Source: Selaginella moellendorffii (lineage: Eukaryota > Plantae > Lycopodiophyta). Taken from it: a DNA stretch of 64,000 bases. Under the pieces are notes generated by a model. The model searched no databases, was not told the DNA's origin, and saw only the letters and a list, made by a program, of their open reading frames with translations. This document shows, in pieces, positions 18,332-58,166 of this stretch; position 1 is the stretch's first letter, and each line of letters opens with the position of its first letter. The stretch covers positions 56,855 through 120,854 of the forward strand of contig NW_003314343.1 in assembly GCF_000143415.4 (NCBI RefSeq), read 5' to 3'. A program made the position numbers and the translations under genes.

Positions 18332-18355
18332 AAGCTCTATTTCGTTAAAGTGGGA
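18332..18355 (+). repeat. Left TIR, copy 1
   Basis: AAGCTCTATTTCGTTAAAGTGGGA. Confidence 0.9.
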
Positions 18356-18773
18356 ATTGTCATTATCCCACTTGTAAAATAAGGTTTCCAAACCTTTATA
18401 TAGTGTATAAATATAACAAAATTCAACTGCATTGAGGCACATGCCATTTTATTTTAAACAAGGAAATGTCTACTCAATCACTTCTCCTCCCCCTGCCACT
18501 ACTTCACCTCTCTCTTCTCCTTGTCATCGTCGTCCAATTTCTTTCCATTCTTTTAATATTGGCTCAGTTGCTCCGAGTCTAGGTAGAGCCCAAGTCCCCA
18601 TTCAATCTTTACTTTCCCCTTATTAATAAAACAACTTCGTAGACTTCCAATAACATGCTGTAACACTTCTAGTATAATGCAAATCCTCTCAAAGAATTGT
18701 TTTTTAATATTAATACAATGGCATGGAACCCCATGCCATAATAAGTTACATTTTTAAATAAATACATGCCATC

Positions 18774-21700
18774 TCAGACTGTTATTTTTTGCCTCCAACG
18801 CCTATACAATAATCTTGGAATTTCATCACTTTCCACACTATCAGGATTTAAACCCAATAGTAATGCCATCTCTTCTCTAATACGTCCACGCTCATGTTCA
18901 GTGGTCGAAAAACCCATCCGGTTGAGCAAATTATAAAGATGCGGATAGTGCTTGGCTAGACAATATACATGCCATAAATGATGACTGGTGTCTGTCCGAT
19001 CAAATGGCTTCTGATATACCATTCCATCTGCCATTTGGTTTATTTCTGCAGCCACCTCCTGGATTGGCCGGTTCTCTATCACCATCGCTCCAAGCCGTTT
19101 TGCAAGGTCCCCCAGAACATACGGTTTCTTCTCCCTAGTTTCCATACTGCAAGAGATGGGGTGCACTGCATATGTGTGCGTGTTCACTGCAGTTTTAATC
19201 GGCGAGTCATCGATGATGAGGATTTCACTTGACCTAGCAGTCCGGTTCATCACTACAGCCTTTGGCTTGAGGAAGATGGGCTTGCTACCCCTCACATGGA
19301 CCATAGTTAAGCAATCCTCCTGCATTAGGAGAAAGTCAAATGATAATATTACTCGGGTCTGATCGTGCATCATCTGTAGCAACGTTAATGCATTGTGGCG
19401 CATCATGGATGTCCAAACTCCCAATTGCAAATTGAACCCGGCCCTTTGTTTTAAGTGTCGCATGGTCATTATTAGATCCCGCAGTTTCTCCCGTGTGATT
19501 AATGTGAATCTGTCTCTTTTGACCAACTTGCGACCGCAGGCTTTGGAGGGTGCAGTGACATTCGAGGACGAGCCACGCTCATGGGAGAAAAGGACACCGT
19601 TCAGATCAAAAACCATACAGTACTTTCGCCGTGACTCTGAAATGAAATGCGTCAGCATAAAAAATGGTACAAGTCAATTTTACCATCTACAATATTAGCG
19701 AATGGTGCTCCCGATGGTCATTCAGAGGGTTTTGGTCGAGGAAACGTGAAGGGCGGAAATACTCTCCTCTGCAATGTGGGGTCAATCGCATCCGATGGCG
19801 TGTGGGCACATGCCATTTCAGCTGTAGACTCTGGTACAACTGGCTCAACAGTGGCATGGGGTGGTTCCGATGGCGTGTGATCACACGCCATTTCAGCTGG
19901 TGCCTCCGTTGGCAAAGTGGACATGACCGAACAGGCAGCAGGGGCGGTGTAGGGAGGTTCCAACGGCGCGTAGTCAGACGATTGGGCACACGTTGAGTCC
20001 GTTGGAAATGAGGATACGACCGGCTTGGCGGCTGGGGCAGCCTCATGCGGGTCCAATGGCGCCTGGTCACCGTCAGTTGGATACGTGGACAAGATTGACT
20101 CAGTGGTATGGGCAGCATCAAGTGGAGCGTGGTCAGCTTGCTTGTCGTTGATATGGATAGTAGCCTCCACCAGCTCTGATGACTCTTGCAGGCAAGTAGA
20201 GTCCACTGGCAGATCCATATGCATGTCCAAATATCTCCCTTCGATTGAGATGGTATCCTCCCTACTGGCTACTAAAAACAAACTCATTAGCACATTGAAT
20301 CGACTATACTATATTTACTATCAACTGCTATTGGGCGCACTGCTGATTCTGAAGGATTGGACATACGTTTCGACCCTTGCTTGGCACTATCCTTCCTCGA
20401 CACTAAAGGCTAGAGTTTGTATCTTAATTCAACTAAATAATCTCTACTTACCATTTGCTTTGCAACCTATATGGATAATGTTAGAAATGGTAAAAGGTTA
20501 GGAATGGATGTACTATTATTTACCTGATGGTTTGTCTTGTATGACCTTCCTCCGCTGCTCTTTGGCCACCTCAGGCTGGCCATCGTCGTCATCATCGTCG
20601 TCGTCGTTATTGTGATCGTCACCATTGTGAGGACCATCCAAGTCCTCTTCGTCCTCCTCTTCTTCGTCCTCCTCTTCTTTGTCCTCCTCTTCGTCCTTCT
20701 GCTCTTCCTGCTCATTATCTTTCTCTGGCTCCTCATCCCCCTCCTACATTTCTTCCATAGGCTGCTCAGGCTGGATGGCTTGTTCTTCCAGGACCATCTT
20801 GGGAAAATCATCTGGCTGAGTCTCCATCTCAAAATACAAGACATCCATAGCCTGTTTTAGTGCGTGACCTAGGACCGTATCCTCACCCGACTGTCTTAAC
20901 ATGGTTTCTGCACGTTCTTGCACCCTTCGAAGACGACGAGATGAGAAAAACGTGGCTCTGACTTGAAAAGCATCCCTCATCCATTGTACCTCTCCATTGA
21001 GATTGGGGAAGGGGAGTCCGCCATAGGAATCTGAGTCAGGAGGTGGTGACCGCGAGGCATTACCTATCATCTTTTCGTTGCCCTTCTTCCTTTTCGAATC
21101 AAACGCCTCTGATCCCGACGACTGTCCAACGTGCTTTCGTTTTTTATGACCACTGTCAGTTTGAGCTTGGCTGGTGCTTGCCTGTTTTGCCTTTGAAGAA
21201 GTGTCTCCTGCAAGGAATGGCATGAGACCACACGCCATTGCAAATATAATTTGTACCTCCCTTTTTCCTATTGCTTGTCTGTTTGTCCTTCTTCGACACG
21301 CCACCAGTGCGCTTTTCAGTCCTTGTGTCTGAATATTCACAACGATCTATAATCAAAATGGCGTGAGGCCTCACGTGACCTTACCTTGTGCAGGTTGTGA
21401 GCTCGGCCCAACAGTAACTGTTAATGCCGTTTCAGCATCTGGGGGTGGCCACGCTCCTGCATACAGAGCTTGTGAGATAACATTTAAACTTAAAGTGCGT
21501 ACTCACCAGGTTCGCAGAGAAGATACTGTTTTTCTTTGGCAACTGTAATTATATGCTTCATTGAAGTCACCTCTTCAATGGAGTTTGTCACCGCAACACA
21601 CGGGACACCCTTGAGTAGTGCAGCTCGAAAGAATAGTCCGCCGTAGTTGTACTCGACAACGCATTTGCCCTTGGAGTCGGAAGCAGGTGCTATTTCGTTG

Positions 21701-24296
21701 AAGACCCAGCTGAGCATTTCCCATGCTGCACCTGAAGCTTTCTCTGGATTCGAAAGCTCCATAGCCGTCTTTAGTTCCTCAAGCACGGGTAAATTGACCT
21801 CCCTCAGATCAATTCGATCGGCCTTGTCGAAAGAAGCTGGGAAGTCACTCCAGTCCCACTCTGCTGCAGGACCAATAACAAGGGCGAGTGTGAAGATGTG
21901 GACATTCGTCGGTATCTTCTTCTTAGCCATTATCCCATGGATCTCCTGCATCTCCTTGCCTTTCAACCGAGCCTTCACCTCGTTCAAGGCCTTCCAGAAC
22001 TTGTGATAGGATTCGGAGTTGTAGATCATATAGTGGACTGAAGATTCCACCTCCGCAAGTCCCACCATTAAGTCAATGATGGAGCTGACTTCGTCTGCAT
22101 GAGTGATCTCCTCGTTTGTGAAGTCCATCACACAAAAGATGTTCTTAACCTGCTCATCTCCGCGGGAAACGATGCTCCTCCACCTTTGATCCTCATCCGA
22201 ATTCACGTATACCCGGTAAGGTTCTCGATAGGCCTCTGCTGCGGGGTCGAGCTGTTTCTAAAGCCGGCGGTCGACATCCCTCTTAATGAAATTTGGATAC
22301 TGATCCAACTTCTCAGCTTTACTTTTCGTGGCATCCCGCAGTAGATCGATGAACTTGGGGGCCCCCTTCACGTACTCGTCGATGTCTTCATTTGACAACT
22401 CCAGCTCTTCCATCATCTCTTGCGTGGTGTCGATGCTCACCCTCTCCACGGCCACTTGCTCGAAGATCCAATCCTTCAATAGCGCACGAGCTCTTAGAGT
22501 CGTGCACAAGTCCTTGTATGTCGCAATATGGCCGGGAGTCATTTTGGTCTTGTTGAAGACTACCTCACCACGTAGAAGAGCATTAGCCACTGTCAGAAGG
22601 TCGTCGTCGTCTAGAGACTGCGAGAAACGCAAGGTGTTGAGCTTCAAATCATTGGGCTTCCGGCCGTCCTCCACACCCATTGAGTTTAGCAACTCCCCGT
22701 CATAGTACCTCCTCAGTACATCTACCCATTTGTCAAAAACAACTTTTGTCGCAAGTAGAATGTTATGGATGATGAGTGTGTCATTGACCCCCAGTGTTTT
22801 CGAGAGAAGACTCGAGAATTCCTGCAATGGAAATGGCGTGAGGCCACATGCTATGCCACATGCAACGAGGCTTACCTGCCAGGCGCTAGTTGCTAGTGCA
22901 CGTCCTTGTCCTGGTTTTTGTGGCTTCTTTAGTTGAACCCAGAGCTTCCGTGTTCGTGCCAATGTCTTGTGCAGACCCGATTTGTAGCACGTTTCTTGCT
23001 TGACATTCTGCGCGTGGGAGATGGATATGATAGATCGGAGGGGTGAGTTGCCTTTTATCAGGCGGACAACTCTTGTCTTGAAGACTTTCTTCACCTCCTC
23101 ACCCACCATAATATCCACAACTATCTCTTGCATCGCCAAGCTAGAATGCTGCCCGGAGACGGCATAGAACCGGATGTTCTGATCATCCAACACCTTCCTA
23201 TTGATCAAGTCTGGAAACCTCGTCTCGCCCTTCATTGTTCGGTAGTAGGGGATCACGTTTGCGATGTTGGGTGTTACTGGACTTGCCAGCATCTTTTGCT
23301 TCAGTTTCTCCACCCACTCATCAGATACTAGCCTGTGGTTGTATTTGCTTTGGATGTCGATATGGCTCACGTCGATTGTATATACTTTGTTGGAATAGTA
23401 ACAAGTACTATTATCTGCGACGATTTTTGCTGCCTCTTCTTGCTCTTTCTGCTCTTTGCGGCTCTTCTTTTTGGTGGGTGTAGTGTTCGAACCCGAGGCA
23501 ATGGCATCACCGAGTAGCTTCTTTTTTGGAGCAGCAGAGTCGGACGTCGGCTTGAGCTTGACCACCCTTTTCTGCTTCAGGGTAGTTTCCAGATCGACCC
23601 CCTTCCCCTTCGCTTCGTGAACTGGAGGCACTCTCAACGGCTCAATGTTGGAATATAGTTTTTGAACATCACCGTAGGTGAGGTCCGTGGATTCCATGTG
23701 ATCTTCATAGACCCGCAGCGTCTTTGAAATTGTGGGCCTCCTGGACAACCTCTCCCTAGCTCCCTCTAGGAATTCCTCATAGCCGCTGCCCCCCTCCAGG
23801 AAGCCGCTAGGATGTGCAAGGTGGATCTTGAAGGCGGACGCTGTCTCTACCACAAGTACCAGTCCATATTCTTGCATGGAACTGCATGGAGTGTCTGTCA
23901 CTTGGATGAGGATCCCCATGCATTCTTTTCTCCCACCATCTGTGTTGTACAGCCTCAGATCCTCGCCTTCCATCCCAAAAGTCCAACTGGTGAGCTCCTC
24001 CCCCTTCTCTGCATCCACATTGACAGTGGCTGGAAGAAGAACGCAATTCCTCGCCTGTTCAGAAATGCACAACAATTAGAGCTGACAGATGAAAAGCTAG
24101 CAGCTGGAAATAACGTGAGGCCACACGCCATTCACCACTGCATCAGATGTCTTGAGGCTGCATCCTAAGATGGCGTGAGGCTACATGCCATCTGTAACCG
24201 GACTGCACTCGAGAGCCCAATCGGTGCATGCCAATGTTGCTACTGAATGGCATGTGGCCTCATGCCATTTTCTACTTGGCCTAAAAGACTTACCAT
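18774..24296 (-). pseudogene. Multi-exon cargo gene, copy 1 (ParB-like / MTase-like / HAD phosphatase fusion)
   Basis: Homolog of 52103-57720. CAG>TAG stop at 22258-22260, and a ~56-bp deletion near 21050 removes a splice acceptor. HAD motif VFDLNGVL and IIDDSPIK. ParB-like AVSGQHSSLA. Confidence 0.8.
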
Positions 24297-27157
24297 TTGA
24301 AGTCGAATGGAGGCCGTGACAATCGAGGCCGGACTCGCTGGCGAATGTGCACTGTGTGTGCAGCGGATTGTAGCAGCAAGGCTACTCTGCCACTTACAGT
24401 TGGAGAGTGGCGCTGAAATCTCCCAAGACGCCAAGTGGGCTGCGTGTGGGTGGCGGAGTGGGCAGCGGAGTTGGCGGCGAAGTTACAAACTGGGTGTGTC
24501 TTGAAGTGGACACCGATGCACAGGAGCGCGATGCGAGCGCGAGTGTGATGCAAGCGCGAGTGGACGCCAATGCATACGAGAAACCTATAGAGAAGGTAGA
24601 TGAGCGCGAATGTGAGCGTGATCGCGAGTGGGAGCGCGATGCGAGCGCGAGCGCGAGTACGAAGCAAAATGCAAAACCTAACCTCACACGCGCGAAATGT
24701 CACAACGGTTGGTAATCCCGCCACGTCATCATTCCTCGGACTTGGGCGCCACCATTAATTTCTGGATTGCCGCGCGCATGCAAGCACACAAAATCCAAAA
24801 GAAATCCGCAACGTCATCATTCCTCGGACTGCATGCACGCGAAATCCAAAAGAAAGATCATGATTGGGATATCATTTAATACCCTCGCTATATTTATACC
24901 ATGCATGATTGGATATTCCAAAGCATCTTGTATTTCAAAAAATGGCAGATGTTCAGCTAAATAAAGAAATTCTATCTGTTTCTATTTTTCTCTCAAATCA
25001 ATATTATAGCGTGTGGGCTCATGCAATTTTGAACCAAAGAAACCCAAAAAATGTTGGACCCAAAATATTTTGAGAAAACCCAAAAAACCCTAAACATTTA
25101 AAACCCAAAAATCCAGGCGTCCTGTGGCGTTATTCCTTGAATGGCGTGTGGGCGCATGCCATTTTCAGGGCTAAATGCTGAATGGAGAAAAATTCCCTTT
25201 CAGTGCAAATGCTGCAAGAGGCAGATGCCGAGCACAAAGGACTGTAATTACCTCATATGACATAGATAAACTTTTCTCTATTTGGCAAAGATAAACTTTA
25301 TAGCGTGTGGGCTCATGCAATTTTGAACCCAAAAAATGCACGGAAAAATTCTCGGCGTCATCTGGCGTTATCTCTTGAATGGCGTGGGGCCGCATGCCAT
25401 TTTCAGGGGCACATAGGAGTATATTCCTAGGATATTCTGACACGCGTGAGATTTTTTTGAGTTTTCTGGAGATCCAACTGTTAGATCGCAACTAGATTTT
25501 ACAGAATGGTATACAATGTCTTTCTTGATGACCCTGCAAAGATGCATCTCGATCGGACACCACATGAGACCATACGAGCCTTACAATGTTTCAGGGGCAT
25601 TTGCCATAGATCCGACCGTTATTTTGCTCCAAGATTTTACAGTTTGGTGTGCATTGACCTTTCCATCGACACTGCAAAGAGACATCACAATCAGATGCGG
25701 GATCACAAGAAACTAACTTCACTAACTCTGGTTTCACCAAGATCTACGTAAGGAGTTATGAAATGAAAGGACCCTCTCTATTGAAATGTGTTTATGGTCC
25801 TAGGGGCATTGTGACATATCAAAGGATTTTGCATCAAGTTCTGTATTTGCATGTTTATCAAGCTACTGAATTGCTAAACCCTAAACCCTAAACATGTGGC
25901 AAATGCTGCGTGAAGAAAGATGCCCTTTCTGGGCTAATGCTGTAAGAGGCAGATGCCGAGCAGATGTATCTCAGGCTAGCGAAGGGGACAAACGAAAGCT
26001 AGTTATAAACATGACGGGATGCAAATAGATTACTAGGCTGGTCCTGCGAAAATCAAAAACCATAATTGAAAACATTGAAAATGCAAAAGGAAAGGTTTAT
26101 AATATTTTTGAATTTTAAGCAACCAAAGGAATGTAAGTAGGGCATGTGTTTGTAAGTTTAAAAATGCCTCAACCACTTAAATTCCCAAGTAAATAAAGTT
26201 GTTTCTATTTTTTGTACAGGTAAACTTTATAGCGTGTGGGCTCATGCAATTTTGAACCCAAAAATACACCAAAAAATGCTCGACTAGCATTATTCTTTGA
26301 ATGGCGTGTGGCCTTATATTGCCATAAATGGACGTACACACACAGCATAATTATTCCTTTACACGGCGAATAATCTTGGCGCGGATCGCTGACATGGCAT
26401 GGCAAAGTTCGAATCACTGACATGGCACAGCTGGATCGAGGCAAGGACATGATGTGACAAAGTTCAACCTCCGACAGCAAAGTCTAGAAGCTACTCAGTT
26501 TGAAATTTGTCAGAGGAGTCATAAAATCTGGTTTGTCAGAGGATTTGATATGACGTTCAAACGTGTGTTATTTTTGAATTCTCGAACTCATTCCTAGGTC
26601 TATCATTTTTGTGCGCCGTGTTCTTGGTTCCGCTGAGCGCAGTGAGCGCTGCTTGTGTAAGCGGCGTTGTGAGCTGTGGTTTATGCGTCTACGAGCGGTT
26701 GTGGCATTGCGAGCGCCATTGCGAGCGGCAGTTTATGCGAGTGGCAGTTTGTGCGAGTGGCGCTACGAGCAGTTGCAGTGTTGCGAGCGGCACTGTCTTT
26801 GGTGTGGCTACCGCTTCCTCTTGATATTCGGCACTTGTGCTTCCTGGTATGTTCACCATGGAATGGCTTAGGACCACATTTAGAAATGGCATAAGGCCAC
26901 ATGCCATCTTGGGCCCTTGCAATTTCATGGCTAGCGTATTGTCATGTATGTTTTTACTTGCCTGCAACTGTGTGTATATCAAGATGGCATGAGGCCTCAT
27001 GCCAATTTTGTGAATGCGAAATTTCACGTGGGTGTCAATAGCATGTTTGAATAATGGCATGTGGCCTCATGCTATTGAGGTTGTTTGGTATGTTATGATT
27101 TAGGCCATTCTCCAATCATTTTTTGTATGGTCTTAACTTCTTTTCTGCACTTTCAGA

Positions 27158-30100
27158 ATGACCTTCAGGGTTGGGGAAAAGGTTTACATTTTGAATGGTG
27201 GGAAGAGAGTTGCAAAAGGGACCCTTGTGTCTATGGATCAGAACTTTGTTATACATTGTCAAAGGCTTGGGGAAGGCAATGCTGCTGTATTAGTAGAGAC
27301 TGTCTTCGATGGGAATGTGGTCGCTATTGAACGAGGAGAGATGGTCGTCGGGGTAAATGTTGTTGTTGCCTTGAAAAATCTTCAAAAGAAAGCAGATGTT
27401 GGGGACAGCGCAAGTGCGACGCATGTTCCCTCCGTGGATCTTAAGAACCGTGCTACATGGATTCAAGCGAAGGTGTTTCTAAACAACCCCAAGGGGGAGG
27501 TGGTAGCTGAGGGCTTAGCCACAGTTGTCGATCCAAGAGATGCGGTTGCTAATCAAGAATTGGGCTGGGATGATATTGGAGTTGCGATTTTAGAGGTTGT
27601 TGACACAGAAGAAAACAATCTGACTATTGGAAGCATTGTGCGGTGGAAATTGAGGCACTTAGTGTTTGAGAATGTGAAGGATTCACAATCAAACACCACT
27701 ACAACTGATGACAGAACATCTCTTCATGGGAAAAGAAAGTACACCTTCCTAAAGCGCAGCCAAAGGGATCTGAGCAACGAACCGAAAAGGTAGAAAATGG
27801 CGATAGAGGTTCGAATGGTCTCGACAGTTGCTTGTTGCAAGAGGAGGTGCTGTCAACATGCTGATTGGGATGCTATTGAAGAGGAGAGAGCAAGATACAA
27901 GACATTGTCCTGGAAGGCAGCTCGCAATTTTGTGTATGAGGCATTACGGTCATCTGTTGATGCTTCAGAACATCAGGTGGGGGGCATGGTCTTCCAGAGG
28001 GGTTTGGTCTGCATGAAGGCATGGAGAATCATTTATGGAGTCCCTGAACCACATTCTATAGAATCAAAACTGAGTTCAAGGAACAAAGGGTTCAACAGGC
28101 AGTCCATGGGAACGATGGTACGCACAAAACCAGGGGTCATGTTGTATATGGAGAGGCAATCTTCAAGAGGTTTGTCGAGACATGTAGCGAGCAACAACCA
28201 CATAAAACCCGCCTCTTGGAAGATGGAACACGAGACACCCAACGAGTTCTCCCTTCCATGTATACCAAGGGGGCCATATTGGAAGATGTGAATCGGGAAC
28301 TCCAGAGTAATGGCTACAGGAAGCTGAGCCAATCTAGATTTAGTAGATTGTGGAGCAACAAGTTTAGGGATGTGAGTATAGGAAAGTACTCCAGCTTTTC
28401 AAAGTGTGACGAGTGCACTGCTATCAAAATGGCTTTGTCGAAGAATTCTTGTAGCACTCAAGAGCGAGAGATGTTGGTTAGAAGGCGGCTCGACCACAAC
28501 ATCGAGCAGAGAAACTGCAGGACTGCATATTATCATAACAGGATTCTCTCCATGGAGAGACCTGACTCGTACCTCTGCATCATCCACGACAAAATGGACC
28601 AGAAAAAGACGTGCTTACCTCGACTCAATCCTGCCCCCAAGGCAATCTCTTCATCCATGCAGCTGCCTGTGTCTCTGTTTGGCATAATCGCTCATGGGCA
28701 TGGTGCCCAGAACTATGGGAACTTCTTTGTACCTCTATGGGGTGGCGGGGGTGCAAACATGATGATTGCGTCCCTAGCAAAACACTTAAGGTCTCTGCAA
28801 AGTGTGCAGACTGAGCTGAACGGCCAACCCTTGCATAAGGCCCTTGTCGATCGAACCCCATACAGGGTTCAGCTGGAGGAGGAGCAAAGGCTTGCAGTAT
28901 CGCGTGGGGCCCCATGCCATCTCAGTGAATATGTTGGCCGTCAGATTGTAGGGTTATCACGTGAGGCCTCATGCCATTCCGACGAGGCTGGTCGCCCGGT
29001 GAATGCACAGCCTCATCCAAACGAAGCAGAATCTCAAGGAAGTTCTTGCGGCCGATGTGGCCTTCCACCCCATCTTCTGCTCCAAACAGACAATGCTGGC
29101 AGTGAGAACAAAAACATGTACGTCTTCGCGTACTTGGCGATGCTTGTTGCCAAAGGCATATTTGAAACGGTTACACTTGGCTTTCTCATGGTTGGGCACA
29201 CTCATGAAGACGTCGATGCCATGTTCAGTCACCTGGCAGAGTCCCTCCGGCGATCTGATGTCCTCACCCTCCCACAACTCTACGATGAATTCCAAAATTG
29301 CATCAAAGGCACTGTTGAAGCTGCACTTCTGACAGAGGTTCCAGACTTTAAGGGGTTTGTAAGAGGCTACATCAGGGACGGATCCGAAACGCTGATTGGC
29401 CACTCCAAGCCTCTTCAGTTTCATTTCAGCATGTGTGACGGTGCTCCAGTGATGAGGTACAAGATGAGAGTATGGGACACAGTGTGGTTGCCAGTGGACG
29501 GCATTGAACTCTTCAAGAGAGATCCCATAACTGGGGAACCTATGATTCCTCAGGGTTCCCCACGGCCGATGCACCCGGATGGACTCAAAGACCAGGAAAG
29601 TATAGTGGCCGGGATTAGACAGCATATTCCCTTCTGGAAGAGGGGGTTGGTGTTTGGTGGAGAATCCTATTTTCAGAGGTGCAAGCCTTTGCTCGAATAC
29701 TGGGAGAAGATTATATCTGCTATCCAAAATGGGCCAGTTGTATATGAAGAATTGGAAGAGTCCTTTTGGCCAGAACCCAGAGCACCAGATAGTAGCGGAA
29801 CAATGTCCTCTGGAAATGCAGTGACAGATAACGATGTTGAGGATAACTATTGTGGGCCGAGGAACAAGAAGCCGGATTCAGCATTCAATCCAGTACAGGT
29901 CTGCAAAGGAATGGTCGTGCTTGTCAGACCCAGTAATAAAAAACAAATGATATGGGTGGGGCGCTGCATCACTGATGCAGAGGAGGACACGGAAACTAAC
30001 TCCTTCAATGTAACTGTGGAGTGGTTCAAGCCAAGTTCCGGATATACGAAGGATTGCCTAGAAAAGAGATGGGTGCTGAATCCAAGGGATCCCAGCATGA

Positions 30101-49151: not shown

Positions 49152-49251
49152 NNNNNNNNNNNNNNNNNNNNNNNNNNNNNNNNNNNNNNNNNNNNNNNNN
49201 NNNNNNNNNNNNNNNNNNNNNNNNNNNNNNNNNNNNNNNNNNNNNNNNNNN
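49152..49251. other. Assembly gap (100 N)
   Basis: N run. Confidence 1.
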
Positions 49252-49481
49252 ACACTATTTGCCTTGCTGCAACTGTATATATTTTTGTGTGCGTGACTAG
49301 TCACCCATACAAAAATATATACAGTTGCAGCAAGGCAAAAGGAATATGGCAATAGGCTAGCAGGGGCCAAAGATGGCATGAGGCCTCATGCCATCTTGAT
49401 ATACACACAACTGCAGGCAAGTAAAAACATACATGACAATATGCTAGCCATGAAATTGCAAGGGCCCAAGATGGCATGTGG

Positions 49482-49538
49482 CCCTAAACCCTAAACATGG
49501 CATGTGACCCTAAACCCTAAACCCTAAACCCTAAACCC
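49482..49538 (-). repeat. Interstitial telomeric repeats (CCCTAAA)n filling a deletion
   Basis: ccctaaa arrays replace ~380 bp that is present in copy 1. Confidence 0.85.
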
Positions 49539-52102
49539 TCTGACAAATTTCAAACTGAGTAGCTTCTAGACTTTGCTGTCGGAGGTTGAACTTTGTCACA
49601 TCATGTCCTTGCCTCGATTCAGCTATGCCATGTCAGTGATTCGAACTTTGCCATGCCATGTCAGCGATCCGCGCCAAGATTATTCGCCGTGTAAAGGAAT
49701 AATTATGCTGTGTGTGTACGTCCATTTATAGCAATATAAGGCCACACGCCATTCAAAGAATAATGCTAGTCGAGCATTTTTTGGTGTATTTTTGGGTTCA
49801 AAATTGCATGAGCCCACACGCTATAAAGTTTACCTGTACCAAAAATAGAAACAACTTTATTTACTTGGGAATTTAAGTGGTTGAGGCATTTTTAAACTTA
49901 CAAACACATGCCCTACTTACATTCCTTTGGTTGCTTAAAATTCAAAAATATTATAAACCTTTCTTTTTGCATTTTCAATGTTTTCAATTATGGTTTTTGA
50001 TTTTCGCAGGACCAGCCTAATAATCTATTTGCATCCCGTCATGTTTATAGCTAGCTTTCGTTTGTCCCCTTCGCTAGCCTGAGATACATCTGCTCGGCAT
50101 CTGCCTCTTACAGCATTTGCCCAGAAAGGGCATCTTTCTTCACGCAGCATTTGCCACATGTTTAGGGTTTTGGGTTTAGGGTTTAGCAATTCAGTAGCTT
50201 GATAAACATGCAAATACAGAACTTGATGCAAAATCCTTTGATATGTCACAATGCCCCTAGGACCATAAACACATTTCAATAGAGAGGGTCCTTTCATTTC
50301 ATAACTCCTTACGTAGATCTTGGTGAAACCAGAGTTAGTGAAGTTAGTTTTTTGTTATCCCGCATCTGATTGTGAGGTCTCTTTGCAGTGTCGATGGAAA
50401 GGTCAATGCACACCAAACTGTAAAATCTTGGAGCAAAATAACGGTCGGATCTATGGCAAATGCCCCTGAAACATTGTAAGGCTCGTGTGGTCTCATGTGG
50501 TGTCCGATCGAGATGTTTCTTTGCAGGGTCATCAAGAAAGACATTGTATACCATTCTGTAAAATTTAGTTGCGATCTAACGGTTGGATCTCCAGAAAACT
50601 CAAAACAATCTCGCGCGTATCAGAATATTCTAGGAATATACTCCTATGTGCCCCTGAAAATGGCATGTGGCCCCACGCCATTCAAGAGATAACGCCAGAT
50701 GACGCCAAGCATTTTTTTGTGCATTTTTTGGGATCAAAATTGCATGAGCCCACACGCTTGAATGTCACATCAAATCCTCTGACAAACCAGATCTTATAAT
50801 TCCTCTGACAAATTTCAAACTGAGTAGCTTCTAGACTTTGCTGTCGGACGTTGAACTTTGTCACATCATGTCCTTGCCTCGATCCAGCTGTGCCATGTCA
50901 GTGATTCGAACTTTGCCATGCCATGTCAGCGATCCGCGCCAAGATTATTCGCCGTGTAACTGCTCGGCATCTGCCTCTTACAGTATTTGCCCAGAAAGGG
51001 CATCTTTCTTCACGCAGCATTTGCCACATGTTTAGGGTTTAGGGTTTAGGGTTTAGGGTTTAGCAATTCAGTAGCTTGATAAACATGCAAATACAGAACT
51101 TGATGCAAAATCCTTTGATATGTCACAACGCCCCTAGGACCATAAACACATTTCAATAGAGAGGGTCCTTTCATTTCATAACTCTTTACGTAGATCTTGG
51201 TGAAACCAGAGTTAGTGAAGTTAGTTTCTTGTGATCCCGCATTTGATTGTGATGTCTCTTTGCAGTGTTGATGGAAAGGTCAATGCACACCAAACTGTAG
51301 AATCTTGGAGCAAAATAACGGTCGGATCTATGGCAAATGCCCCTGAAACATTGTAAGGCTCGTGTGGTCTCATGTGGTGTCCGATCGAGATGCATCTTTG
51401 CAGGGTCATCAAGAAGGACATTGTATACCATTCTTTATTTAGCTGAACATCTGGCATTTTTGGAAATACAAGATGTTTTGGAATACCCAATCATGCATGG
51501 TATAAATATAGCGAGGGTATTAAATGATATCCCAATCATGATCTTTCTTTTGGATTTCGCGTGCATGCAGTCCGAGGAATGATGACGTTGCGGATTTCTT
51601 TTGGATTTCACGTGCATGCATGCGCGCGGCGATCCAGAAATTAATGGTGGCGCCCAAGTCCAAGGAATGATGACGTTGCGGGATTACCAACCGTCGTGAC
51701 ATTTCGCGCGTGTGAGGTTAGGTTTTGCATCGTACTCGCGCTCGCACACTCGCGCTCGCATCGCGCTCCCACTCGCGATCACGCTCACATTCGCGCTCAT
51801 CTACCTTCTCTACAGGTTTCTCGTGTGCATCGGCGTCCACTCGCGCTTGCATCACACTCGCACTCGCATCGCGCTCGTGTGCATCGGCGTCCACTTCAAG
51901 ACACACCCAGTTTGTAACTTCGCCGCCAACTCCACCGCCCACTCTGCCACCCACACGCAGCCCACTTGGTGTCCCGGGAGATTTCAGCGCCACTCTCCAA
52001 CTGTAAGTGGCAGAGTAGCCTTGCTGCTACGATCCGCTGCATACACAGTGCACATTCGCCAGCGAGTCCGGCCTCGATTGTCACGCCTCCATTCGGCTTC
52101 AA

Positions 52103-55100
52103 ATGGTAAGTCTTTTAGGCCAAGTAGAAAATGGCATGAGGCCATATGCCATTCAGTAGCAACATTGGCATGCACCGATTGGGCTCTCGAGTGCAGTCCG
52201 GTTACAGATGGCGTGTAGCCTCACGCCATCTTAGGATGCAGCCTCAAGACATCTGATGCAGTGGTGAATGGCGTGTGGCCTCACGTTATTTCCAGCTGCT
52301 AGCTTTTCATCTGTCAGCTCTAATTGTTGTGCATTTCTGAACAGGCAAGGAATTGCGTTCTTCTTCCAGCCACTGTCAATGTGGATGCAGAGAAGGGGGA
52401 GGAGCTCACCAGTTGGACTTTTGGGATGGAAGGCGAGGATCTGAGGCTGTACAACACAGATGGTGGGAGAAAAGAATGCATGGGGATCCTCATCCAAGTG
52501 ACAGACACTCCATGCAGTTCCATGCAAGAATATGGACTGGCACTTGTGGTAGAGACAGCGTCCGCCTTCAAGATCCACCTTGCACATCCTAGCGGCTTCC
52601 CGGAGGGGGGCAGCGGCTATGAGGAATTCCTAAAGGGAGCTAGGGAGAGGTTGTCCAGGAGGCCCACAATTTCAAAGACGCTGCAGGTCTATGAAGATCA
52701 CATGGAATCCATGGACCTCACCTACGGCGATGTTCAAAAACTATATTCCAACATTGAGCCGTTGAGAGTGCCTCCAATTCGCAAAGCGAAGGGGAAGGGG
52801 GTCAATCTGGAAACTACCCCGAAGCAGAAAAGGGTGGTCAAGCTCAAGCCGACGTCCGACTCTCCTTCTCCAAAAAAGAAGCTACTCGGTGATGCCATTG
52901 CCTCGGGTTCGAACACTACACCCACCAAAAAGAAGAGCCGCAAAGAGCAGAAAGAGCAAGAAGAGGCAGCAAAAATCGTCGCAGTTAATAGTACTTGTTA
53001 CTATTCCAACAAAGTATATACAATCGACGTGAGCCGTATCGACATCCAAAGCAAATACAACCACAGGCTAGTATCTGATGAGTGGGTGGAGAAACTGAAG
53101 CAGAAGATGCTGGCAAGTCCAGTAACACCCGACATCGCAGACGTGATCCCCTACTACCAAACAATGAAGGGCAAGACGAGGTTTCCAAACTTGATCAATA
53201 GGAAGGTGTTGGACGATCAGAACATCCGGTTCTATGCCGTCTCCAGGCAGCATTCTAGCTTGGCGATGCAAGAGATAGTTGTGGATATTATGGTGGGCGA
53301 AGAGGTGAAGAAAGTTTTCAAGACAAGAGTTGTCCGCCTGATAAAAGGCAACTCGCCCCTCCGATCTATCATATACATCTCCCACGCGCAGAATGTCAAG
53401 CAAGAAACGTGCTACAAATCGGGTCTGCACGAGACATTGGCACGAATACGGAAGCTCTGGGTTCAACTGAAGAAGCCACAAAAACCAGGACAAGGACGTG
53501 CACTAGCAACTAGCGCCTGGCAGGTAAGCCTCATTGCATGTGGCATAGCATGTGGCCTCACGCCATTTCCATTGCAGGAATTCTCGAGTCTTCTCTCGAA
53601 AACACTAGGGGTCAATGACACACTCATCATCCATAACATTCTACTTGCGACAAAAGTTGTTTTTGACAAATGGGTAGATGTACTGAGGAGGTACCATGAC
53701 GGGGAGTTGCTAAACTCAATGGGTGTGGAGGACGGCCGGAAGCCCAATGATTTGAAGCTCAACACCTTGCGTTTCTCACAGTCTCTAGACGACGACGACC
53801 TTCTGACAGTGGCTAATGCTCTTCTACGTGGTGAGGTAGTCTTCAACAAGACCAAAATGACTCCCGGCCATATTGTGACATACGAGGACTTGTGCACGAC
53901 TCTGAGAGCTCGTGCGCTATTGAAGGATTGGATCTTCGAGCAAGTGGCCGTGGAGAGGGTGAGCATCGACACCACGCAAGAGATGATGGAAGAGCTGGAG
54001 TTGTCAAATGAAGACATCGACGAGTACGTGAAGGGGGCCCCCAAGTTCATCGATCTGCTGCGGGATGCCACGAAAAGTAAAGCTGAGAAGTTGGATCAGT
54101 ATCCAAATTTCATTAAGAGGGATGTCGACCGCCGGCTTCAGAAACAGCTCGACCCCGCAACAGAGGCCTATCGAGAACCTTACCAGGTATACGTGAATTT
54201 GGATGAGGATCAAAGGTGGAGGAGCATCGTTTCCCGCGGAGATGAGCAGGTCAAGAACATCTTTTGTGTGATGGACTTCACAAACGAGGAGATCACTCAT
54301 GCAGACGAAGTCAGCTCCATCATTGACTTAATGGTGGGACTTGCGGAGGTGGAATCTTCAGTCCACTATATGATCTACAACTCCGAATCCTATCACAAGT
54401 TCTGGAAGGCCTTGAACGAGGTGAAGGCTCGGTTAAAAGGCAAGGAGATGCGGGAGATCCATGGGATAATGGCTAAGAAGAAGATACCGACGAATGTCCG
54501 CATCTTCACACTCGCCCTTGTTATTGGTCCTGCAGCAGAGTGGGACTGGAGTGACTTCCCAGCTTCGTTCGACAAGGCCGATCGAATTGATCTGAGGGAG
54601 GTCAATTTACCCGTGCCTGAGGAACTGAAGATGGCTATGGAGCTTTCGAATCCAGAGAAAGCTCCAGGTGCAGCATGGGAAATGCTCAGCTGGGTCTTCA
54701 ACGCAATAGCAGATGAGTCACCTGCTTGCGACTCCAAGGGCAAATGCGTTGTTGAGTACAACTGCGGCGGACTATTCTTTCGAACCGCACTACTCAAGGG
54801 TGTCCCGTGTGTTGCGGTGACAAACTCCATTGAAGAGGTGACTTCAATGGAGCATATAATTACAGTTGCCAAAGAAAAACAGTATCTTCTCTGCGAACCT
54901 GGTGAGTACGCACTTTAAGTTTAAATGTTATCTCACAAACTCTGTATGCAGGAGTGTGGCCACCCCCAGATGCTGAAACGGCGTTAACAGCTACTGTTGA
55001 AGATACCCATGTTGGGCCGAGCTCACAACCTGCACAAGGTAAGGTCATGTGAGGCCTCACGCCATTTTGATTATAGATCGTTGTGAATATTCAGACACGA

Positions 55101-57720
55101 GGACTGAAAAACGCACTGGTGGCGCGTCGAAGAAGGACAAACAGACAAGCAATAGGAAAAAAGGAGGTACAAATTATATTTGCAATGGCGTGTGGTCTCA
55201 TGCCATTCCTTGCAGGAGACACTTCTCCAAAGGCAAAACAGGCAAGCACCAGCCAAGCTCAAACTGACAATGGTCATAAAAAGCGAAAGCACGTTGGACA
55301 GTCGTCGGGATCAGAGGCGTTTGATTCGAAAAGGAAGAAGGGCAACAAAAAGATGATAGGTAATGCCTCGCGGTTATGGCGTGTGTGCTCATGCCATTCA
55401 TTGCAGATCAAGGGCTAAGTGAAAGCAGCCAGTCACCACCTCCTGACTCAGATTCCTATGGCGGACTCCCCTTTCCCAATCTCAATGGAGAGGTACAATG
55501 GATGAGGGATGCTTTTCAAGTCATGGCCACGTTTTTCTCATCTCGTCGTCTTCGAAGGGTGCAAGAATGTGCAGAAACCATGTTAAGACAGTCGGGTGAG
55601 GATACGGTCCTAGGTCACGCACTAAAACAGGCTATGGATGTCTTGTATTTTGAGATGGAGACTCGGCCAGATGATTTTCCCAAGATGGTCCTGGAAGAAC
55701 AAGCCATCCAGCCTGAGCAGCCTATGGAAGAAATGCAGGAGGGGGATGAGGAGCCAGAGAAAGATAATGAGCAGGAAGAGCAGAAGGACGAAGAGGAGGA
55801 CAAAGAAGAGGAGGACGAAGAAGAGGAGGACGAAGAGGACTTGGATGGCCCTCACAATGGTGACGATCACAATAACGACGATGACGATGATGACGACGAT
55901 GGCCAGCCTGAGGTGGCCAAAGAGCAGCGGAGGAAGGTCATACAAGACAAACCATCAGGTAAATAATAGTACATCCATTCCTAACCTTTTACCATTTCTA
56001 ACATTGTCCATGTAGGTCGCAGAGCAAATGGTAAGTAGAGATTATTCAGTTGAATTAAGATACAAACTCTAGCTTTTAGTGTCGAGGAAGGATAGTGCCA
56101 AGCAAGGGTCGAAACGTATGTCCAATCCTTCAGAATCAGCAGTGCGCCCAAGTGATATCGATCCTAGTTCCTCAATAGTAGTTGATGGTAAATACAGTAT
56201 AGTCGATTCAATGTGCTAATGAGTTTGTTTTTAGTAGCACGGGAGGATACCATCTCAATCGAAGGGAGATATTTGGATATGCATATGGATCCGCCAGTGG
56301 ACTCTACTTGCCTGCAAGAGTCATCAGAGCTGGTGGAGGCTACTATCCATATCAACGCCAAGCAAGCTGACCACGCTCCACTTGATGCTGCCCATACCAC
56401 TGAGTCAATCTTGTCCACGTATCCAACTGACGGTGACCAGGCGCCATTGGACCCGCATGAGGCCGCCCCAGCTGCCAAGCCGGTCGTATCCTCATTTCCA
56501 ACGGACTCAACGTGTGCCCAATCGTTTGACTACGCGCCGTTGGAACCTCCCTACACCGCCCCTGCTGCCTGTTCGGTCATGTCCACTTTGCCAACGGAGG
56601 CACTAGCTAAAATGGCGTGTGATCACACGCCATTGGAACCACCCCATGCCACTGTTGAGCCAGTTGTACCAGAGTCTACAGCTGAAATGGCATGTGCCCA
56701 CACGCCATCGGATGCGATTGACCCCACATTGCAGAGGAGAGTATTTCCGCCCTTCACGTTTCCTCGACTAAAACCCTCTCAACGACCATCGGGAGCACCA
56801 TTCTCTAATATTGTAGATGGTAAAATTGACTTGTACCATTTTTTATGCTAACGCATTTCATTTTAGAGTCATGGCGAAGGTACTATATCATTTTTGATCT
56901 GAACAGTGTCCTTTTCTCCCATGAGCGTGGCTCGTCCTCGAATGTCACTGCACCCTCCAAAGCCTGCGGTCGCAAGTTGGTCAAAAGAGACAGATTCACA
57001 TTAATCACACGGGAGAAACTGCGGGATCTAATAATGACCATGCAACACTTAAAACAGAGGGCCGGGTTCAATTTGCAATTGGGAGTTTGGACATCCATGA
57101 TGCGCCACAATGCATTAACGTTGCTACAGATGATGCACGATCAAACGCGAATAATATTACCATTTGACTTTCTCCTAACGCAGGAGGATTGCTTAACTAT
57201 GGTCCATGTGAGGGGTAGCAAGCCCATCTTCCTCAAGCCAGAGGCTGTAGTGATGAACCGAACTGCTGAAATCCTCATCATCGATGACTCGCCGATTAAA
57301 ACTGTAGCGAACACGCACACATATGCAGTGCACCCCATCTCTTGCAGTATGGAAACTAGGGAGAAGAAACCGTATGTTCTGGGGGACCTTGCAAAACGAC
57401 TTGGAGCGATAGTGATAGAGAACCGGCCAGTCCAGGAGGTGGCTGCAAAAATCAACCAAATGGCAGATGGAACGGTATATCAGAAGCCATTTGATCGGAC
57501 AGACACCAGTCATCATTTATGGCATGTATATTGTCTAGCCAAGCACTATCCGCATCTCCATAATCTGCTCAACCGGATGGGTTCTTCGACCACTGAACAT
57601 GAGCGTGGACGTATTAGAGAAGAGATGGCATTACTATTGGGTTTAAATCCTGATAGTGTGGAGAGTGATGAAATTCCAAGATTATTGTATAGGCGTTGGA
57701 GACAAAAAATAACAGTTTGA
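52103..57720 (+). CDS. Multi-exon cargo gene, copy 2 (~1650 aa): ParB/DndB-like + MTase-like + acidic linker + FCP1/HAD-like phosphatase
   Basis: Predicted introns 53524-53577, 54902-54951, 55039-55094, 55167-55215, 55360-55406, 55959-56015, 56031-56079, 56188-56234 and 56820-56866. Splicing keeps one open frame to TGA 57720. The 5' exons (ATG 52103 followed by GTAAG) are uncertain. Confidence 0.75.
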
Positions 57721-58166
57721 GATGGCATGTATTTATTTAAAAATGTAACTTATTATGGCATGGGGTTCCATGCCATTGTATTAATATTAAAAGACAATTC
57801 TTTGAGAGGATTTGCATTATACTAGAAGTGTTACAGCATGTTATTGGAAGTCTACGAAGTTGTTTTATTAATAAGGGGAAAGTAAAGATTGAATGGGGAC
57901 TTGGGCTCCACCTAGACTCGGAGCAACTGAGCCAATATTAAAAGGATGGAAAGAAATTGGACGACAATGACAAGGAGAAGAGAGAGGTGAAGCAGTGGCA
58001 GGGGGAGGAGAAGTGATTGAGTAGACATTTCCTTGTTTAAAATAAAATGGCATGTGCCTCAATGCAGTTGAATTTTGTTATATTTATATACTATATAAAG
58101 GTTTGGAAACCTTATTTTACAAGTGGGATAATGACAATTCCTACTTTAACGAAATAGAGCTTATCA

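What the first reader, a model, noticed from the sequence alone, without database searches (positions are those of the whole stretch)
18332..58162. 13.5-kb cargo-carrying Sola-like DNA transposon, two independent insertions
Seen: two near-identical inverted copies bounded by 24-bp TIRs, with different perfect 4-bp TSDs (TTAA and ATCA), so these are separate transposition events and not a segmental duplication. The transposase and a very large cargo gene point away from a ~2.9-kb central spacer. Knowledge: 4-bp TSDs and D...DN.xxxNKN...GHxxxxxD motifs fit the Sola superfamily, whose members are normally a few kb with a single gene. Inference: an undescribed giant two-gene family that was recently mobile and hops locally.
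Basis: partly seen in the sequence, partly recalled or inferred. Interest (0 to 1): 0.9.

Follow-up and report, generated by a model that had tools for sequence, protein, structure and literature searches.

The report
Giant two-gene Sola1 transposon, two copies
The window holds two separately inserted, now broken copies of a 13.5-kb Sola1-type DNA transposon whose second large gene is not captured cargo but a ParB-like DNA-binding accessory gene, an arrangement first reported in 2025 in a brown alga and seen here in the plant lineage.

Summary
Copy A (18332-31856) and inverted copy B (44477-58162) are 96.8% identical. Each ends in the same 24-nt inverted repeat and has its own perfect 4-bp duplication (TTAA; ATCA), with unrelated flanks. 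A public contig shows a third insertion site.

The transposase is Sola1-type. It matches Pfam DUF7869, which published Sola1 core fragments also hit and Sola2/Sola3 fragments do not. It also aligns with the curated Sola1-1_Ec32 transposase.

The "cargo" reading is not supported. Two Riccia sorocarpa (liverwort) elements of about 14.5 kb carry a collinear homologue in the same divergent position. Its conserved domain folds like ParB/Noc/KorB, and its C-terminus looks like a degenerate N4/N6 DNA methylase.

A giant Sola1 element with a ParB-like plus methylase gene on the opposite strand was described in Ectocarpus in 2025. Sola elements over 15 kb, and moss Sola1, were already known. This is therefore a new member of a known kind.

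Possibly new: each lineage carries 20-26 copies of its own 22-bp palindrome, found only inside the element and partly in 47-54-nt mini-introns. These are candidate sites for the ParB-like protein.

Both window copies are pseudogenised and differ in a neutral pattern.

The parts
18332..31856 (+). Copy A of the element (13,525 bp)
   Evidence: ends defined by TIR and TSD
18328..18331 (.). TSD of copy A, left (TTAA); its partner is at 31857-31860
   Evidence: read directly
18332..18358 (+). Left TIR of A (AAGCTCTATTTCGTTAAAGTGGGAATT); the right TIR is at 31830-31856
   Evidence: I3: 27 nt, 93%
27158..30225 (+). Sola1-type transposase gene of A, about 1,020 codons and collinear with 1,050-1,070-aa homologues. 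Lesions: in-frame stop at 27791-27793 and a 1-nt deletion at about 28046. Catalytic motifs are IHDKMDQ (D at 28588-28590), LQTDNAGSENKN (D at 29089-29091) and GHTHEDVD (from about 29197).
24076..27157 (.). Central spacer between the divergent genes of A. It holds 11 of the 23 palindromes and is rearranged or tandemly duplicated in B.
21493..24075 (-). Accessory (companion) gene of A, main open frame. It equals the 864-codon frame of B. In A it is broken by a CAG>TAG stop at 22258-22260.
22876..23433 (-). ParB/Srx-like domain of the accessory gene in A (equivalent to B 52966-53523)
18774..19658 (-). NIF/FCP1-like (HAD phosphatase-like) frame at the distal end of the accessory side of A. Its motif reads DLNSV instead of DxDxT/V.
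   Evidence: PF03031, 23.9 bits; cut-off 21.8
44477..58162 (-). Copy B of the element, inverted relative to A
44473..44476 (.). TSD of copy B (ATCA on the + strand); its partner is at 58163-58166
   Evidence: read directly
46108..48934 (-). Transposase gene of B. Lesions: a 243-244-bp deletion of the N-terminus (A 27165-27408; the same junction is in L001), a 1-nt insertion at about 47856, and a stop at 47710-47712.
52324..54915 (+). Accessory gene of B: an 864-codon stop-free frame. It contains the ParB-like domain (52966-53523), an in-frame 54-nt GT..AG mini-intron holding a palindrome (53524-53577), a conserved helical block (53578-54243), and a methylase motif-I-like C-terminus (VVEYNCGGLFF, about 54750-54860).
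54916..57717 (+). Further frames on the accessory side of B: an acidic region, a Pro-rich region, and the NIF-like frame at 56830-57717. A path of short GT..AG introns can join them to the 864-codon frame as one protein of about 1,650 aa. This model is unverified.
19795..31314 (.). 23 copies in A of the 22-nt palindrome ATGGCRTGWGGCCWCAYGCCAT. B has 20 copies between 45019 and 56708. There are none elsewhere in the window.
   Evidence: 43 matches, 0 expected; contexts
49152..49251 (.). Assembly gap inside B's central spacer, within a rearranged or duplicated stretch
43563..44345 (-). Partial third copy (fragment C). It covers element coordinates 6081-6637 plus 7172-7400 with B's junction type, lies 127 bp outside B, and runs into gap 43463-43562.
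   Evidence: (D5, I15, I21, I22)

Best explanation
The finding is two independent insertions of one family of giant (13.5 kb) cut-and-paste DNA transposons of the Sola1 group, in a TE-rich region of a streptophyte genome.

Each element has 24-27-nt TIRs and makes 4-bp TSDs. It carries two divergently transcribed genes. The first is a Sola1 (DUF7869) DDD/E transposase of about 1,020 aa. The second is a large accessory gene that belongs to the element lineage and is not captured cargo. The accessory gene encodes a ParB/Srx-fold domain, a conserved helical block, a degenerate N4/N6 DNA-methylase-like C-terminus and, probably in the same transcript, a NIF-like phosphatase-like domain.

Shown: the boundaries, TSDs and separate insertion sites; transposase homology to Sola1; conservation and synteny of the accessory gene in liverwort elements; its ParB-like fold; the element-restricted 22-bp palindromes; and the pseudogene state of both copies.

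Inferred: the transposase excises and reinserts the element. The ParB-like protein binds the 20-26 lineage-specific palindromes, much as bacterial ParB, Noc and KorB bind palindromic sites. It would thereby mark, bridge or regulate its own long element. Both window copies are now dead and would need a transposase supplied in trans. The same N-terminal deletion junction in B and in the third copy L001 fits this, because it implies a deletion derivative spread using transposase from elsewhere.
For: Boundaries and separate insertions. define the TIRs and two different perfect 4-bp TSDs. Searches show a third site with the same terminus.

Sola1 transposase.
- Pfam DUF7869, E = 1.8e-42.
- Homologues of 1,050-1,070 aa are collinear and share invariant D181, D348-N349, K355-N356 and H384-T-H-E-D-x-D390.
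- Core fragments of Sola1-1_AP and of an A. pisum Sola1 protein, taken from the Majorek 2014 supplement, hit DUF7869 as their only Pfam family (E = 0.006 and 0.0007). Sola2 and Sola3 fragments do not hit it.
- A 158-aa fragment of the curated Sola1-1_Ec32 transposase aligns collinearly to window residues 94-243 at E = 3e-5.

Accessory gene is integral to the element.
- Riccia loci L002 and L003 have an upstream gene on the opposite strand, with three collinear blocks homologous to the window frame.
- L002 and L003 are themselves only about 70% identical, yet share both genes.

ParB fold. The AF2 model has pLDDT 76.8. The top 50 PDB matches are all ParB, Noc, KorB, PadC or sulfiredoxin-superfamily structures, best E = 1.9e-4.

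Methylase-like C-terminus. The motif-I-like block is conserved between window and Riccia. A Riccia piece hits PF01555 at E = 0.0012.

Literature. PMC12477816 describes a 21.5-kb Sola1-1_Ec32 with a 4-bp TSD and a 1,104-aa ParB-like plus N4C/N6A methylase gene on the opposite strand.

Palindromes.
- Window: 43 matches, all inside A and B, 0 expected.
- Riccia: 26 and 21 copies of a different 22-nt palindrome, confined to about 14.5 kb around the gene pair.
- Other related loci carry their own multi-copy 22-nt palindromes.

Decay. Lesions are listed. Substitutions are spread evenly over codon positions (18/16/18; non-synonymous to synonymous about 2.5:1).
Against: - The Sola1 assignment rests on motif-level and sub-threshold matches: 16.7-19.7 bits against a cut-off of 26 for 50-aa fragments, and one pairwise E = 3e-5. 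No Repbase profile or phylogeny could be run.
Homology between the two is inferred from shared architecture only.
- The methylase evidence is weak. The window copy has no Pfam hit, and no (D/N/S)PP(Y/F/W) motif occurs in the window or Riccia genes.
- The ParB-like domain lacks the GERRxR-type motif. It reads ISGQHS in relatives and VSRQHS in this copy.
- Nothing shows that the protein binds the palindromes. Many palindromes lie in intron-like units, so they could act at the RNA level or be transposase sites.
- The accessory gene was not detected in the 80 metagenomic relatives. Most of those contigs are short, and the protein evolves fast.
- TIRs and TSDs of the Riccia elements could not be located.
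Confidence: 0.8

Rival explanations
1. The second gene is captured host cargo, as in Pack-MULE or Starship elements, picked up by this one family.
For: The gene has no Pfam family over its main frame. It has almost no detectable relatives among 1.8 billion representatives: 11 hits, best E = 2e-9. A stand-alone homologue sits among ordinary genes in Selaginella.
Against: Two diverged Riccia elements carry collinear homologues in the same orientation next to the same kind of transposase. The domain content (ParB-like plus methylase-like) matches the accessory gene reported in an Ectocarpus Sola1 element. The gene contains the element's own palindromes in its mini-introns.
Confidence: 0.07
2. The two copies arose by an inverted segmental duplication or an assembly artefact, not by transposition.
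For: The copies lie only 12.6 kb apart in inverted orientation. Two assembly gaps lie nearby. A fragment 100% identical to part of B abuts one gap.
Against: Similarity stops exactly at the TIR ends. Each copy has its own perfect 4-bp TSD with unrelated flanks. The copies differ by 3.2% and by many indels. An independent contig shows a third site.
Confidence: 0.02
3. The 22-bp palindromes are not ParB-like binding sites. They could instead be transposase-binding or subterminal motifs, RNA hairpins tied to the mini-introns (splicing control or small-RNA precursors), or tiny palindromic insertions spreading within the element.
For: Many palindromes sit inside 47-54-nt GT..AG units or just before CAG acceptors. 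Two lie in frame in the variable linker of the transposase, where homologues have a gap. Some cluster near the ends, like CACTA or Ac subterminal motifs.
Against: They also fill the intergenic spacer. They are palindromic dimer-type sites of the kind bound by ParB, Noc and KorB. They change sequence between lineages while the ParB-like gene is retained. No data exclude this rival.
Confidence: 0.4
4. The element belongs to another superfamily with similar footprints, such as piggyBac or Kolobok (TTAA) or CACTA (two genes, weak TNP1 hit).
For: One TSD is TTAA. The N-terminus gives a weak PF03017 TNP1/En/Spm hit at E = 0.01.
Against: The second TSD is ATCA and the third flank is AAAG. There is no piggyBac, Kolobok or CACTA transposase domain. 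The strong DUF7869 match is linked to Sola1 references.
Confidence: 0.03

Closest known systems
Sola1-1_Ec32, the giant Sola1 transposon of Ectocarpus (Genome Biol 2025, PMC12477816)
   Same: It is Sola1-type with a 4-bp TSD and is larger than 10 kb. [quoted passage not shown] Transposases in such giant families are often pseudogenised. A fragment of its transposase aligns with the window's.
   Different: It is 21.5 kb against 13.5 kb, and its TIR is 282 bp (AACCG termini) against 24-27 nt (AAGCTC termini). Its methylase domain was recognisable to its authors. Here the catalytic motif IV is absent and only motif I is visible. The window element also has a NIF-like domain and dispersed 22-bp palindromes, which the parts of the paper I read do not mention. 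Its authors listed the accessory gene as 'Ectocarpus specific'. Direct homology of the two accessory proteins was not tested.
Repbase Sola1 elements (Sola1-1_AP; Sola1-1_PPa of Physcomitrella; Bao et al. 2009)
   Same: They share the 4-bp TSD, TIRs, and a transposase with the D...(S/T)DNxGxxN(K/R)N...GHT motifs. Sola occurs in mosses, and some Sola elements exceed 15 kb (PMC10741241).
   Different: Most described Sola elements are 2-9 kb with one gene. Whether Sola1-1_PPa is this very family could not be checked, because Repbase was not available and the host species is unknown.
Bacterial ParB/parS, Noc/NBS and KorB/OB systems
   Same: The accessory domain has the ParB/Srx fold. The element carries many short palindromes of a single type, analogous to parS, NBS or OB sites.
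   Different: This is a eukaryotic, transposon-borne protein. The CTP-binding GERRxR-type motif is replaced by (I/V)SGQHS. The sites are 22 bp rather than 13-16 bp. No binding, spreading or partner ATPase has been shown.
En/Spm (CACTA) and PIF/Harbinger two-gene transposons
   Same: Besides the transposase, they need a second element-encoded DNA-binding protein that recognises repeated short motifs within the element (TnpA; the Myb-like ORF2).
   Different: The transposases, TSD lengths (3 bp) and accessory-protein folds are unrelated. In En/Spm the motifs are subterminal only.

Membership tests
Sola superfamily, Sola1 group | 4-bp target site duplication | tested here: met
   TTAA/TTAA and ATCA/ATCA, both perfect. 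The 4-bp rule for Sola is stated in PMC10741241 and in the Ectocarpus supplement.
Sola superfamily, Sola1 group | Terminal inverted repeats (11-1124 bp in described Sola elements) | tested here: met
   24-27-nt TIR found only at the four element ends
Sola superfamily, Sola1 group | Transposase with the Sola1 catalytic core (D ... SDNxGGQN(R/K)N ... GHT) | tested here: met
   The window has IHDKMDQ, TDNAGSENKN and GHTHEDVD, invariant in 8 relatives. Sola1 reference fragments hit the same Pfam model (DUF7869) at E = 0.006 and 0.0007; Sola2 and Sola3 fragments do not. The Sola1-1_Ec32 fragment aligns at E = 3e-5. All these scores are modest.
Sola superfamily, Sola1 group | Placement inside the Sola1 clade in a phylogeny or profile comparison with Repbase Sola1/2/3, Zator and KDZ | not testable with these tools
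   No Repbase library or full reference sequences were available. Only short fragments from paper supplements could be used.
Giant Sola1 with ParB-methylase accessory gene (Sola1-1_Ec32 type) | Large accessory gene on the strand opposite the transposase, inside the TIRs | tested here: met
   the same layout is seen in Riccia L002 and L003
Giant Sola1 with ParB-methylase accessory gene (Sola1-1_Ec32 type) | ParB-like DNA-binding domain in the accessory protein | tested here: met
   AF2 model with pLDDT 76.8. The top 50 Foldseek PDB hits are all ParB, Noc, KorB, PadC or Srx-superfamily structures; best E = 1.9e-4, TM about 0.4. There is no sequence-level hit.
Giant Sola1 with ParB-methylase accessory gene (Sola1-1_Ec32 type) | N4C/N6A DNA methyltransferase domain | tested here: inconclusive
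   A motif-I-like block is conserved, and a Riccia piece hits PF01555 at E = 0.0012, below the cut-off. The window copy has no Pfam hit. The catalytic (D/N/S)PP(Y/F/W) motif is absent in the window and in Riccia.
Giant Sola1 with ParB-methylase accessory gene (Sola1-1_Ec32 type) | Sequence homology of the accessory protein to the Ectocarpus protein | not tested
   The Ectocarpus accessory protein sequence was not found in the supplement passages I searched.
ParB/Srx superfamily (functional ParB-like clamp) | Nucleotide-binding GxxR / GERRxR motif and an HTH that reads a palindromic site | tested here: not met
   The motif position reads (I/V)SGQHS in relatives and VSRQHS in the window. The following helical block gave no fold match. 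The fold is ParB-like, but ParB-type biochemistry is not supported.
NIF / FCP1-SCP HAD phosphatases (PF03031) | Pfam NIF match and the catalytic DxDx(T/V) motif | tested here: inconclusive
   Copy A scores 23.9 bits (cut-off 21.8) and copy B 20.9 bits. The motif is DLNSV, so the second Asp is lost. A NIF gene also lies 5 kb from a DUF7869 transposase in L008, with 30% identity at E = 2e-5.
Cargo-carrying (Pack-type) transposon | The extra gene is a captured host gene, absent from related elements | tested here: not met
   Homologous accessory genes occupy the same position in two diverged Riccia elements.

The most novel reading that the evidence does not exclude
A clade of giant Sola1 transposons, spanning brown algae to land plants, carries its own ParB/parS-like system. 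The ParB-fold accessory protein would recognise 20-26 lineage-specific 22-bp palindromes scattered over the element, including inside its own mini-introns. The protein and its sites would co-evolve. The methylase module has lost its catalytic motif in the plant lineage. The system would let a very long element mark, compact, synapse or self-regulate its DNA.
Probability: 0.3. Interest if true: 0.75.

Novelty: new member of a known kind. Interest (0 to 1): 0.45.

Why it matters
The ParB-like (plus methylase-like) accessory gene reported in 2025 as an oddity of one brown-alga Sola1 family also sits in Sola1 elements of the plant lineage: this window and the liverwort Riccia. That points to an old, integral two-gene design for a Sola1 clade, not lineage-specific cargo.

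The element-restricted palindromes give a concrete, testable candidate for what the ParB-like protein binds. They could explain how cut-and-paste elements of 13-21 kb are recognised or regulated.

For annotation, DUF7869 can be read as the Sola1 transposase core. The large neighbouring 'orphan' genes in bryophyte genomes should be treated as transposon genes.

Tried and rejected
- Word-indexed protein search with the 864-aa accessory frame found nothing. The exhaustive search gave only 11 weak hits.
- Pfam scans of the accessory relatives found nothing significant.
- A profile search of the ParB-like block against PDB sequences gave only chance hits. The fold was seen only through the predicted structure.
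- The fold search of the second conserved block gave no credible match.
- The TIR pattern in JGI metagenome contigs gave no match.
- I fetched 80 related transposase loci from metagenomes. None showed the accessory gene by tblastn or by HMM. Most contigs are too short for this to be informative.
- A search for TIR plus 4-bp TSD pairs around the Riccia elements found nothing convincing. The left ends probably lie outside the fetched flanks.
- A search for paralogous empty sites for A and B found none.
- Rfam found nothing in the window.
- Host identification failed. The reverse-transcriptase search gave only 50-59% hits, the named ones from plants and Closterium. P0078 is not on record in the contig index. 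Physcomitrium patens is a guess from GC content and the age of a UniParc entry, and was not tested.
- The original Sola papers (Bao 2009; Yuan and Wessler 2011) are not held.
- The first exon-chaining run, which minimised intron number, gave implausible long introns and was discarded. The second model is only one possible path.
Full report
OBSERVATION. The window contains a large inverted repeat made of two element copies. Copy A is 18332-31856 (13,525 bp). Copy B is 44477-58162, inverted, and is 13,686 bp including 100 N. A global alignment gives 408 mismatches over 12,895 aligned bases (96.8% identity), plus 29 indels concentrated in the middle.

The terminal 24-mer AAGCTCTATTTCRTTAAAGTRGGA occurs exactly four times in 64 kb, at the four ends, against 0 expected. 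The TIR runs to 27 nt at 93% complementarity. Reading the junctions directly gives TTAA on both sides of A (18328-31 and 31857-60). It gives ATCA on both sides of B (44473-76 and 58163-66). Sequence beyond the TSDs is unrelated.

A public contig, L001 (Logan run ERR10900155), holds a third copy at 96-97% identity. It has an internal deletion, the same ...AGAGCTT terminus and a different flank, AAAG. The copies are therefore separate insertions and not a duplication.

ASSEMBLY GAPS. Gap 49152-49251 is inside B's central spacer. The letters on its two sides are not simply continuous in A's order. In A coordinates the order is 26895-27004, then about 120 nt of B-specific sequence, then the gap, then 27185-27220, 26984-27160 and 27409 onwards. 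This is a local duplication or rearrangement, or a gap-edge artefact. It does not touch the ends, the TSDs or the long reading frames. The adjacent deletion junction (27164|27409) is confirmed by L001. Gap 43463-43562 lies outside B. It cuts off a partial third copy, fragment C (43563-44345), which starts 127 bp beyond B's end and is 100% identical to B over 300 nt. Fragment C may be real or a misassembly.

TRANSPOSASE. On the + strand of A, 27158-30225 is collinear with homologues of 1,050-1,070 aa. The core matches Pfam DUF7869 (PF25273) at E = 1.8e-42. Eight aligned relatives share invariant D181 (IHDKMDQ), D348-N349...K355-N356 (LQxDN...NKN) and H384-T-H-E-D-x-D390. Relatives come from the liverwort Riccia sorocarpa, unnamed transcriptome or metagenome contigs, cnidarians, amphioxus and a sponge.

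I tested the Sola reading with reference fragments, because Repbase is not available.
- The RNase-H-core fragments of Sola1-1_AP and of an A. pisum Sola1 protein, printed in the Majorek et al. 2014 supplement (PMC3985635), hit DUF7869 as their only Pfam family (E = 0.006 and 0.0007). The Sola2-1_HM and Sola3-1_HM fragments do not hit it.
- A 158-aa fragment of the curated Sola1-1_Ec32 transposase (supplement of PMC12477816) aligns collinearly with window residues 94-243, including the first catalytic Asp, at E = 3e-5.

Together with the 4-bp TSD, these results support Sola1 membership. The scores are modest and no phylogeny was possible.

THE SECOND GENE IS NOT CARGO. In B the + strand has an 864-codon stop-free frame (52324-54915), followed by further frames down to a NIF-like frame at 56830-57717. 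The main frame has no Pfam family and almost no relatives.

Two Riccia loci that encode DUF7869 transposases each carry an upstream gene on the opposite strand. Those genes match the window frame in three collinear blocks, aa 226-403, 410-545 and 804-839. The two Riccia elements are only about 70% identical to each other yet share both genes. The gene is therefore part of the element lineage.

The alignment of block 1 has a ParB-like pattern ending in (I/V)SGQHS. Its AlphaFold model has mean pLDDT 76.8. Its PDB matches are ParB, Noc, KorB, PadC and sulfiredoxin-superfamily structures throughout the top 50 (best E = 1.9e-4, probability about 1, TM about 0.4).

The C-terminus (VVEYNCGGLFFRTALLKG...; in Riccia VFDFFSGGIFAREALLNG...) looks like motif I of beta-class amino-methyltransferases. 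A Riccia piece hits PF01555 N6_N4_Mtase at E = 0.0012. No (D/N/S)PP(Y/F/W) motif exists in any of these genes, so the module looks degenerate.

The distal NIF-like frame is borderline for PF03031 (23.9 and 20.9 bits against a cut-off of 21.8) and reads DLNSV in place of DxDxT. A NIF gene also lies 5 kb from a DUF7869 transposase in an unrelated contig, L008. A path of short GT..AG introns can join all frames into one protein of about 1,650 aa, but this is unverified.

WHAT IS ALREADY KNOWN. The 2025 Ectocarpus TE study (PMC12477816) describes giant Sola-1 elements. Sola1-1_Ec32 is 21.5 kb, with a 4-bp TSD and 282-bp TIRs. [quoted passage not shown] Its transposase's best Repbase match is Sola1-1_PPa, from Physcomitrella. 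A review states that Sola elements are mostly 2-9 kb but can exceed 15 kb, and that they occur in the moss (PMC10741241). The window element is thus a further member of a described kind. It is not an undescribed class, and the "cargo" label is wrong.

POSSIBLY NEW FEATURES. The 22-nt palindrome ATGGCRTGWGGCCWCAYGCCAT occurs 43 times at up to 3 mismatches. All 43 are inside A (23) or B (20), against 0 expected. The Riccia elements carry a different 22-nt palindrome, GCTTCGGGAYGCRTCCCGAAGC. It occurs 26 and 21 times, confined to about 14.5 kb around the gene pair and absent from the flanks. Other related loci have their own multi-copy 22-nt palindromes (L010 five copies, L082 four, L037 and L043 three each).

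In the window the palindromes fill the intergenic spacer and the region 3' of the transposase. Several also lie inside very short GT..AG units. One is B 53524-53577 (54 nt, in frame), exactly where Riccia and another homologue have an intron or break. A second unit of 47 nt is partly removed by a 59-nt deletion in A. Two palindromes lie in frame in the variable linker of the transposase, where homologues have a gap.

ParB-family proteins bind short palindromes as dimers. The simplest hypothesis is therefore that the accessory protein recognises these sites. This is inference only. The rival view is that they are transposase sites or RNA hairpins tied to the mini-introns, and nothing excludes it.

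STATE AND AGE OF THE COPIES.
- A, transposase: a stop at 27791-3 and a 1-nt deletion at about 28046. A more intact protein of the same species, P0078 (UniParc UPI0003239915), reads through both.
- A, accessory gene: a CAG>TAG stop at 22258-60 and the 59-nt deletion.
- B, transposase: a 243-244-bp deletion of the N-terminus, a 1-nt insertion at about 47856 and a stop at 47710-12.

B and L001 have the same N-terminal deletion junction. This suggests that a deletion derivative was itself mobilised, presumably in trans.

Substitutions between A and B are spread evenly over codon positions (18/16/18 in the transposase core), and non-synonymous to synonymous is about 2.5:1. That is neutral decay after insertion. 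"Recently mobile" is therefore relative. At 3.2% divergence the copies are not young, and neither is autonomous.

CONTEXT. The rest of the window is Ty3/gypsy debris and other repeats, with no host gene and no Rfam hit. The named matches to the reverse-transcriptase fragment are plants and the alga Closterium, at only 50-59% identity. The host is therefore a streptophyte that is poorly represented in the databases. A moss such as Physcomitrium patens is possible but untested. A second, much more degraded Sola1-type transposase (about 40% identity) lies 160 nt from A's right end. Local hopping cannot be judged from one window.

VERDICT. The Sola assignment is supported and refined to Sola1. The "cargo" and "undescribed family" claims are not supported. 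This is a new member of a known kind, of moderate interest because of the conserved ParB-like gene in the plant lineage and the candidate binding palindromes.

Noticed in passing
window 43563-44345 (next to gap 43463-43562): A partial third copy of the element. It covers element coordinates 6081-6637 plus 7172-7400 with B's junction type and orientation, lies 127 bp outside B's end, and is 100% identical to B 51206-51505 over 300 nt. It is either a recent partial duplication or a gap-edge misassembly.
   Followed up: partly
window 32015-33664 (- strand): A heavily fragmented second Sola1/DUF7869 transposase, about 40% identical to the main family, lies only about 160 nt from the right end of copy A. 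It looks like an older, different Sola1 element at the same spot.
   Followed up: partly
window 53524-53577, about 55390-55436 and 54902-54951 (B); 22822-22875 (A): Very short (47-54 nt) GT..AG intron-like units, several built around the 22-nt palindrome. One coincides with an intron or break position in Riccia and Logan homologues. A 59-nt deletion in A removes part of one unit plus the following 27 nt.
   Followed up: partly
L004 10001-11425 (Selaginella moellendorffii GL377575.1; proteins P0067, P0087-P0089): Stand-alone homologues of the accessory protein, lacking the ParB-like block, sit among ordinary genes (ArfGap, VQ) with no transposase nearby. This is possibly a domesticated or relic transposon gene.
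   Followed up: no
L008 4538-5269 and 10001-12214; also 16540-20249: In a large ENA contig, a NIF-domain gene lies 5 kb upstream of a DUF7869 transposase on the same strand, unlike the window's layout. A CACTA-type transposase (PF02992, DUF4218, DUF4216) lies just downstream.
   Followed up: partly
L003 8781-8964 and 11834-12061; L003 7035-7110: In Riccia the 22-nt palindromes form short tandem arrays with 54-, 39- and 27-nt spacing. One array sits in a gap between transposase-coding blocks, probably an intron.
   Followed up: no
window 49252-49373: B-specific sequence next to the gap contains a long hairpin (GCCTTGCTGCAACTGTATATA ... TATATACAGTTGCAGCAAGGC) that is absent from copy A.
   Followed up: no
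window 3205-5023, 9129-11150, 36432-38266; 5383-6970 versus 13812-15380: Other repeat families (93-99% and 88-90% identity) with gag, RT and integrase fragments of Ty3/gypsy type. One copy lies in the 12.6-kb stretch between the two Sola1 copies.
   Followed up: partly
window 18314-18331 and 58163-58180: Both insertion sites have ACTCAC 12-18 nt outside the element's left end. This could be chance or a hint of target preference. With two sites it cannot be judged.
   Followed up: no
window 20580-20741 / 55622-55966: An acidic low-complexity stretch (D/E-rich, with 12- and 15-nt periodic repeats) in the accessory-gene region accounts for several multiple-of-three indels between the copies.
   Followed up: no
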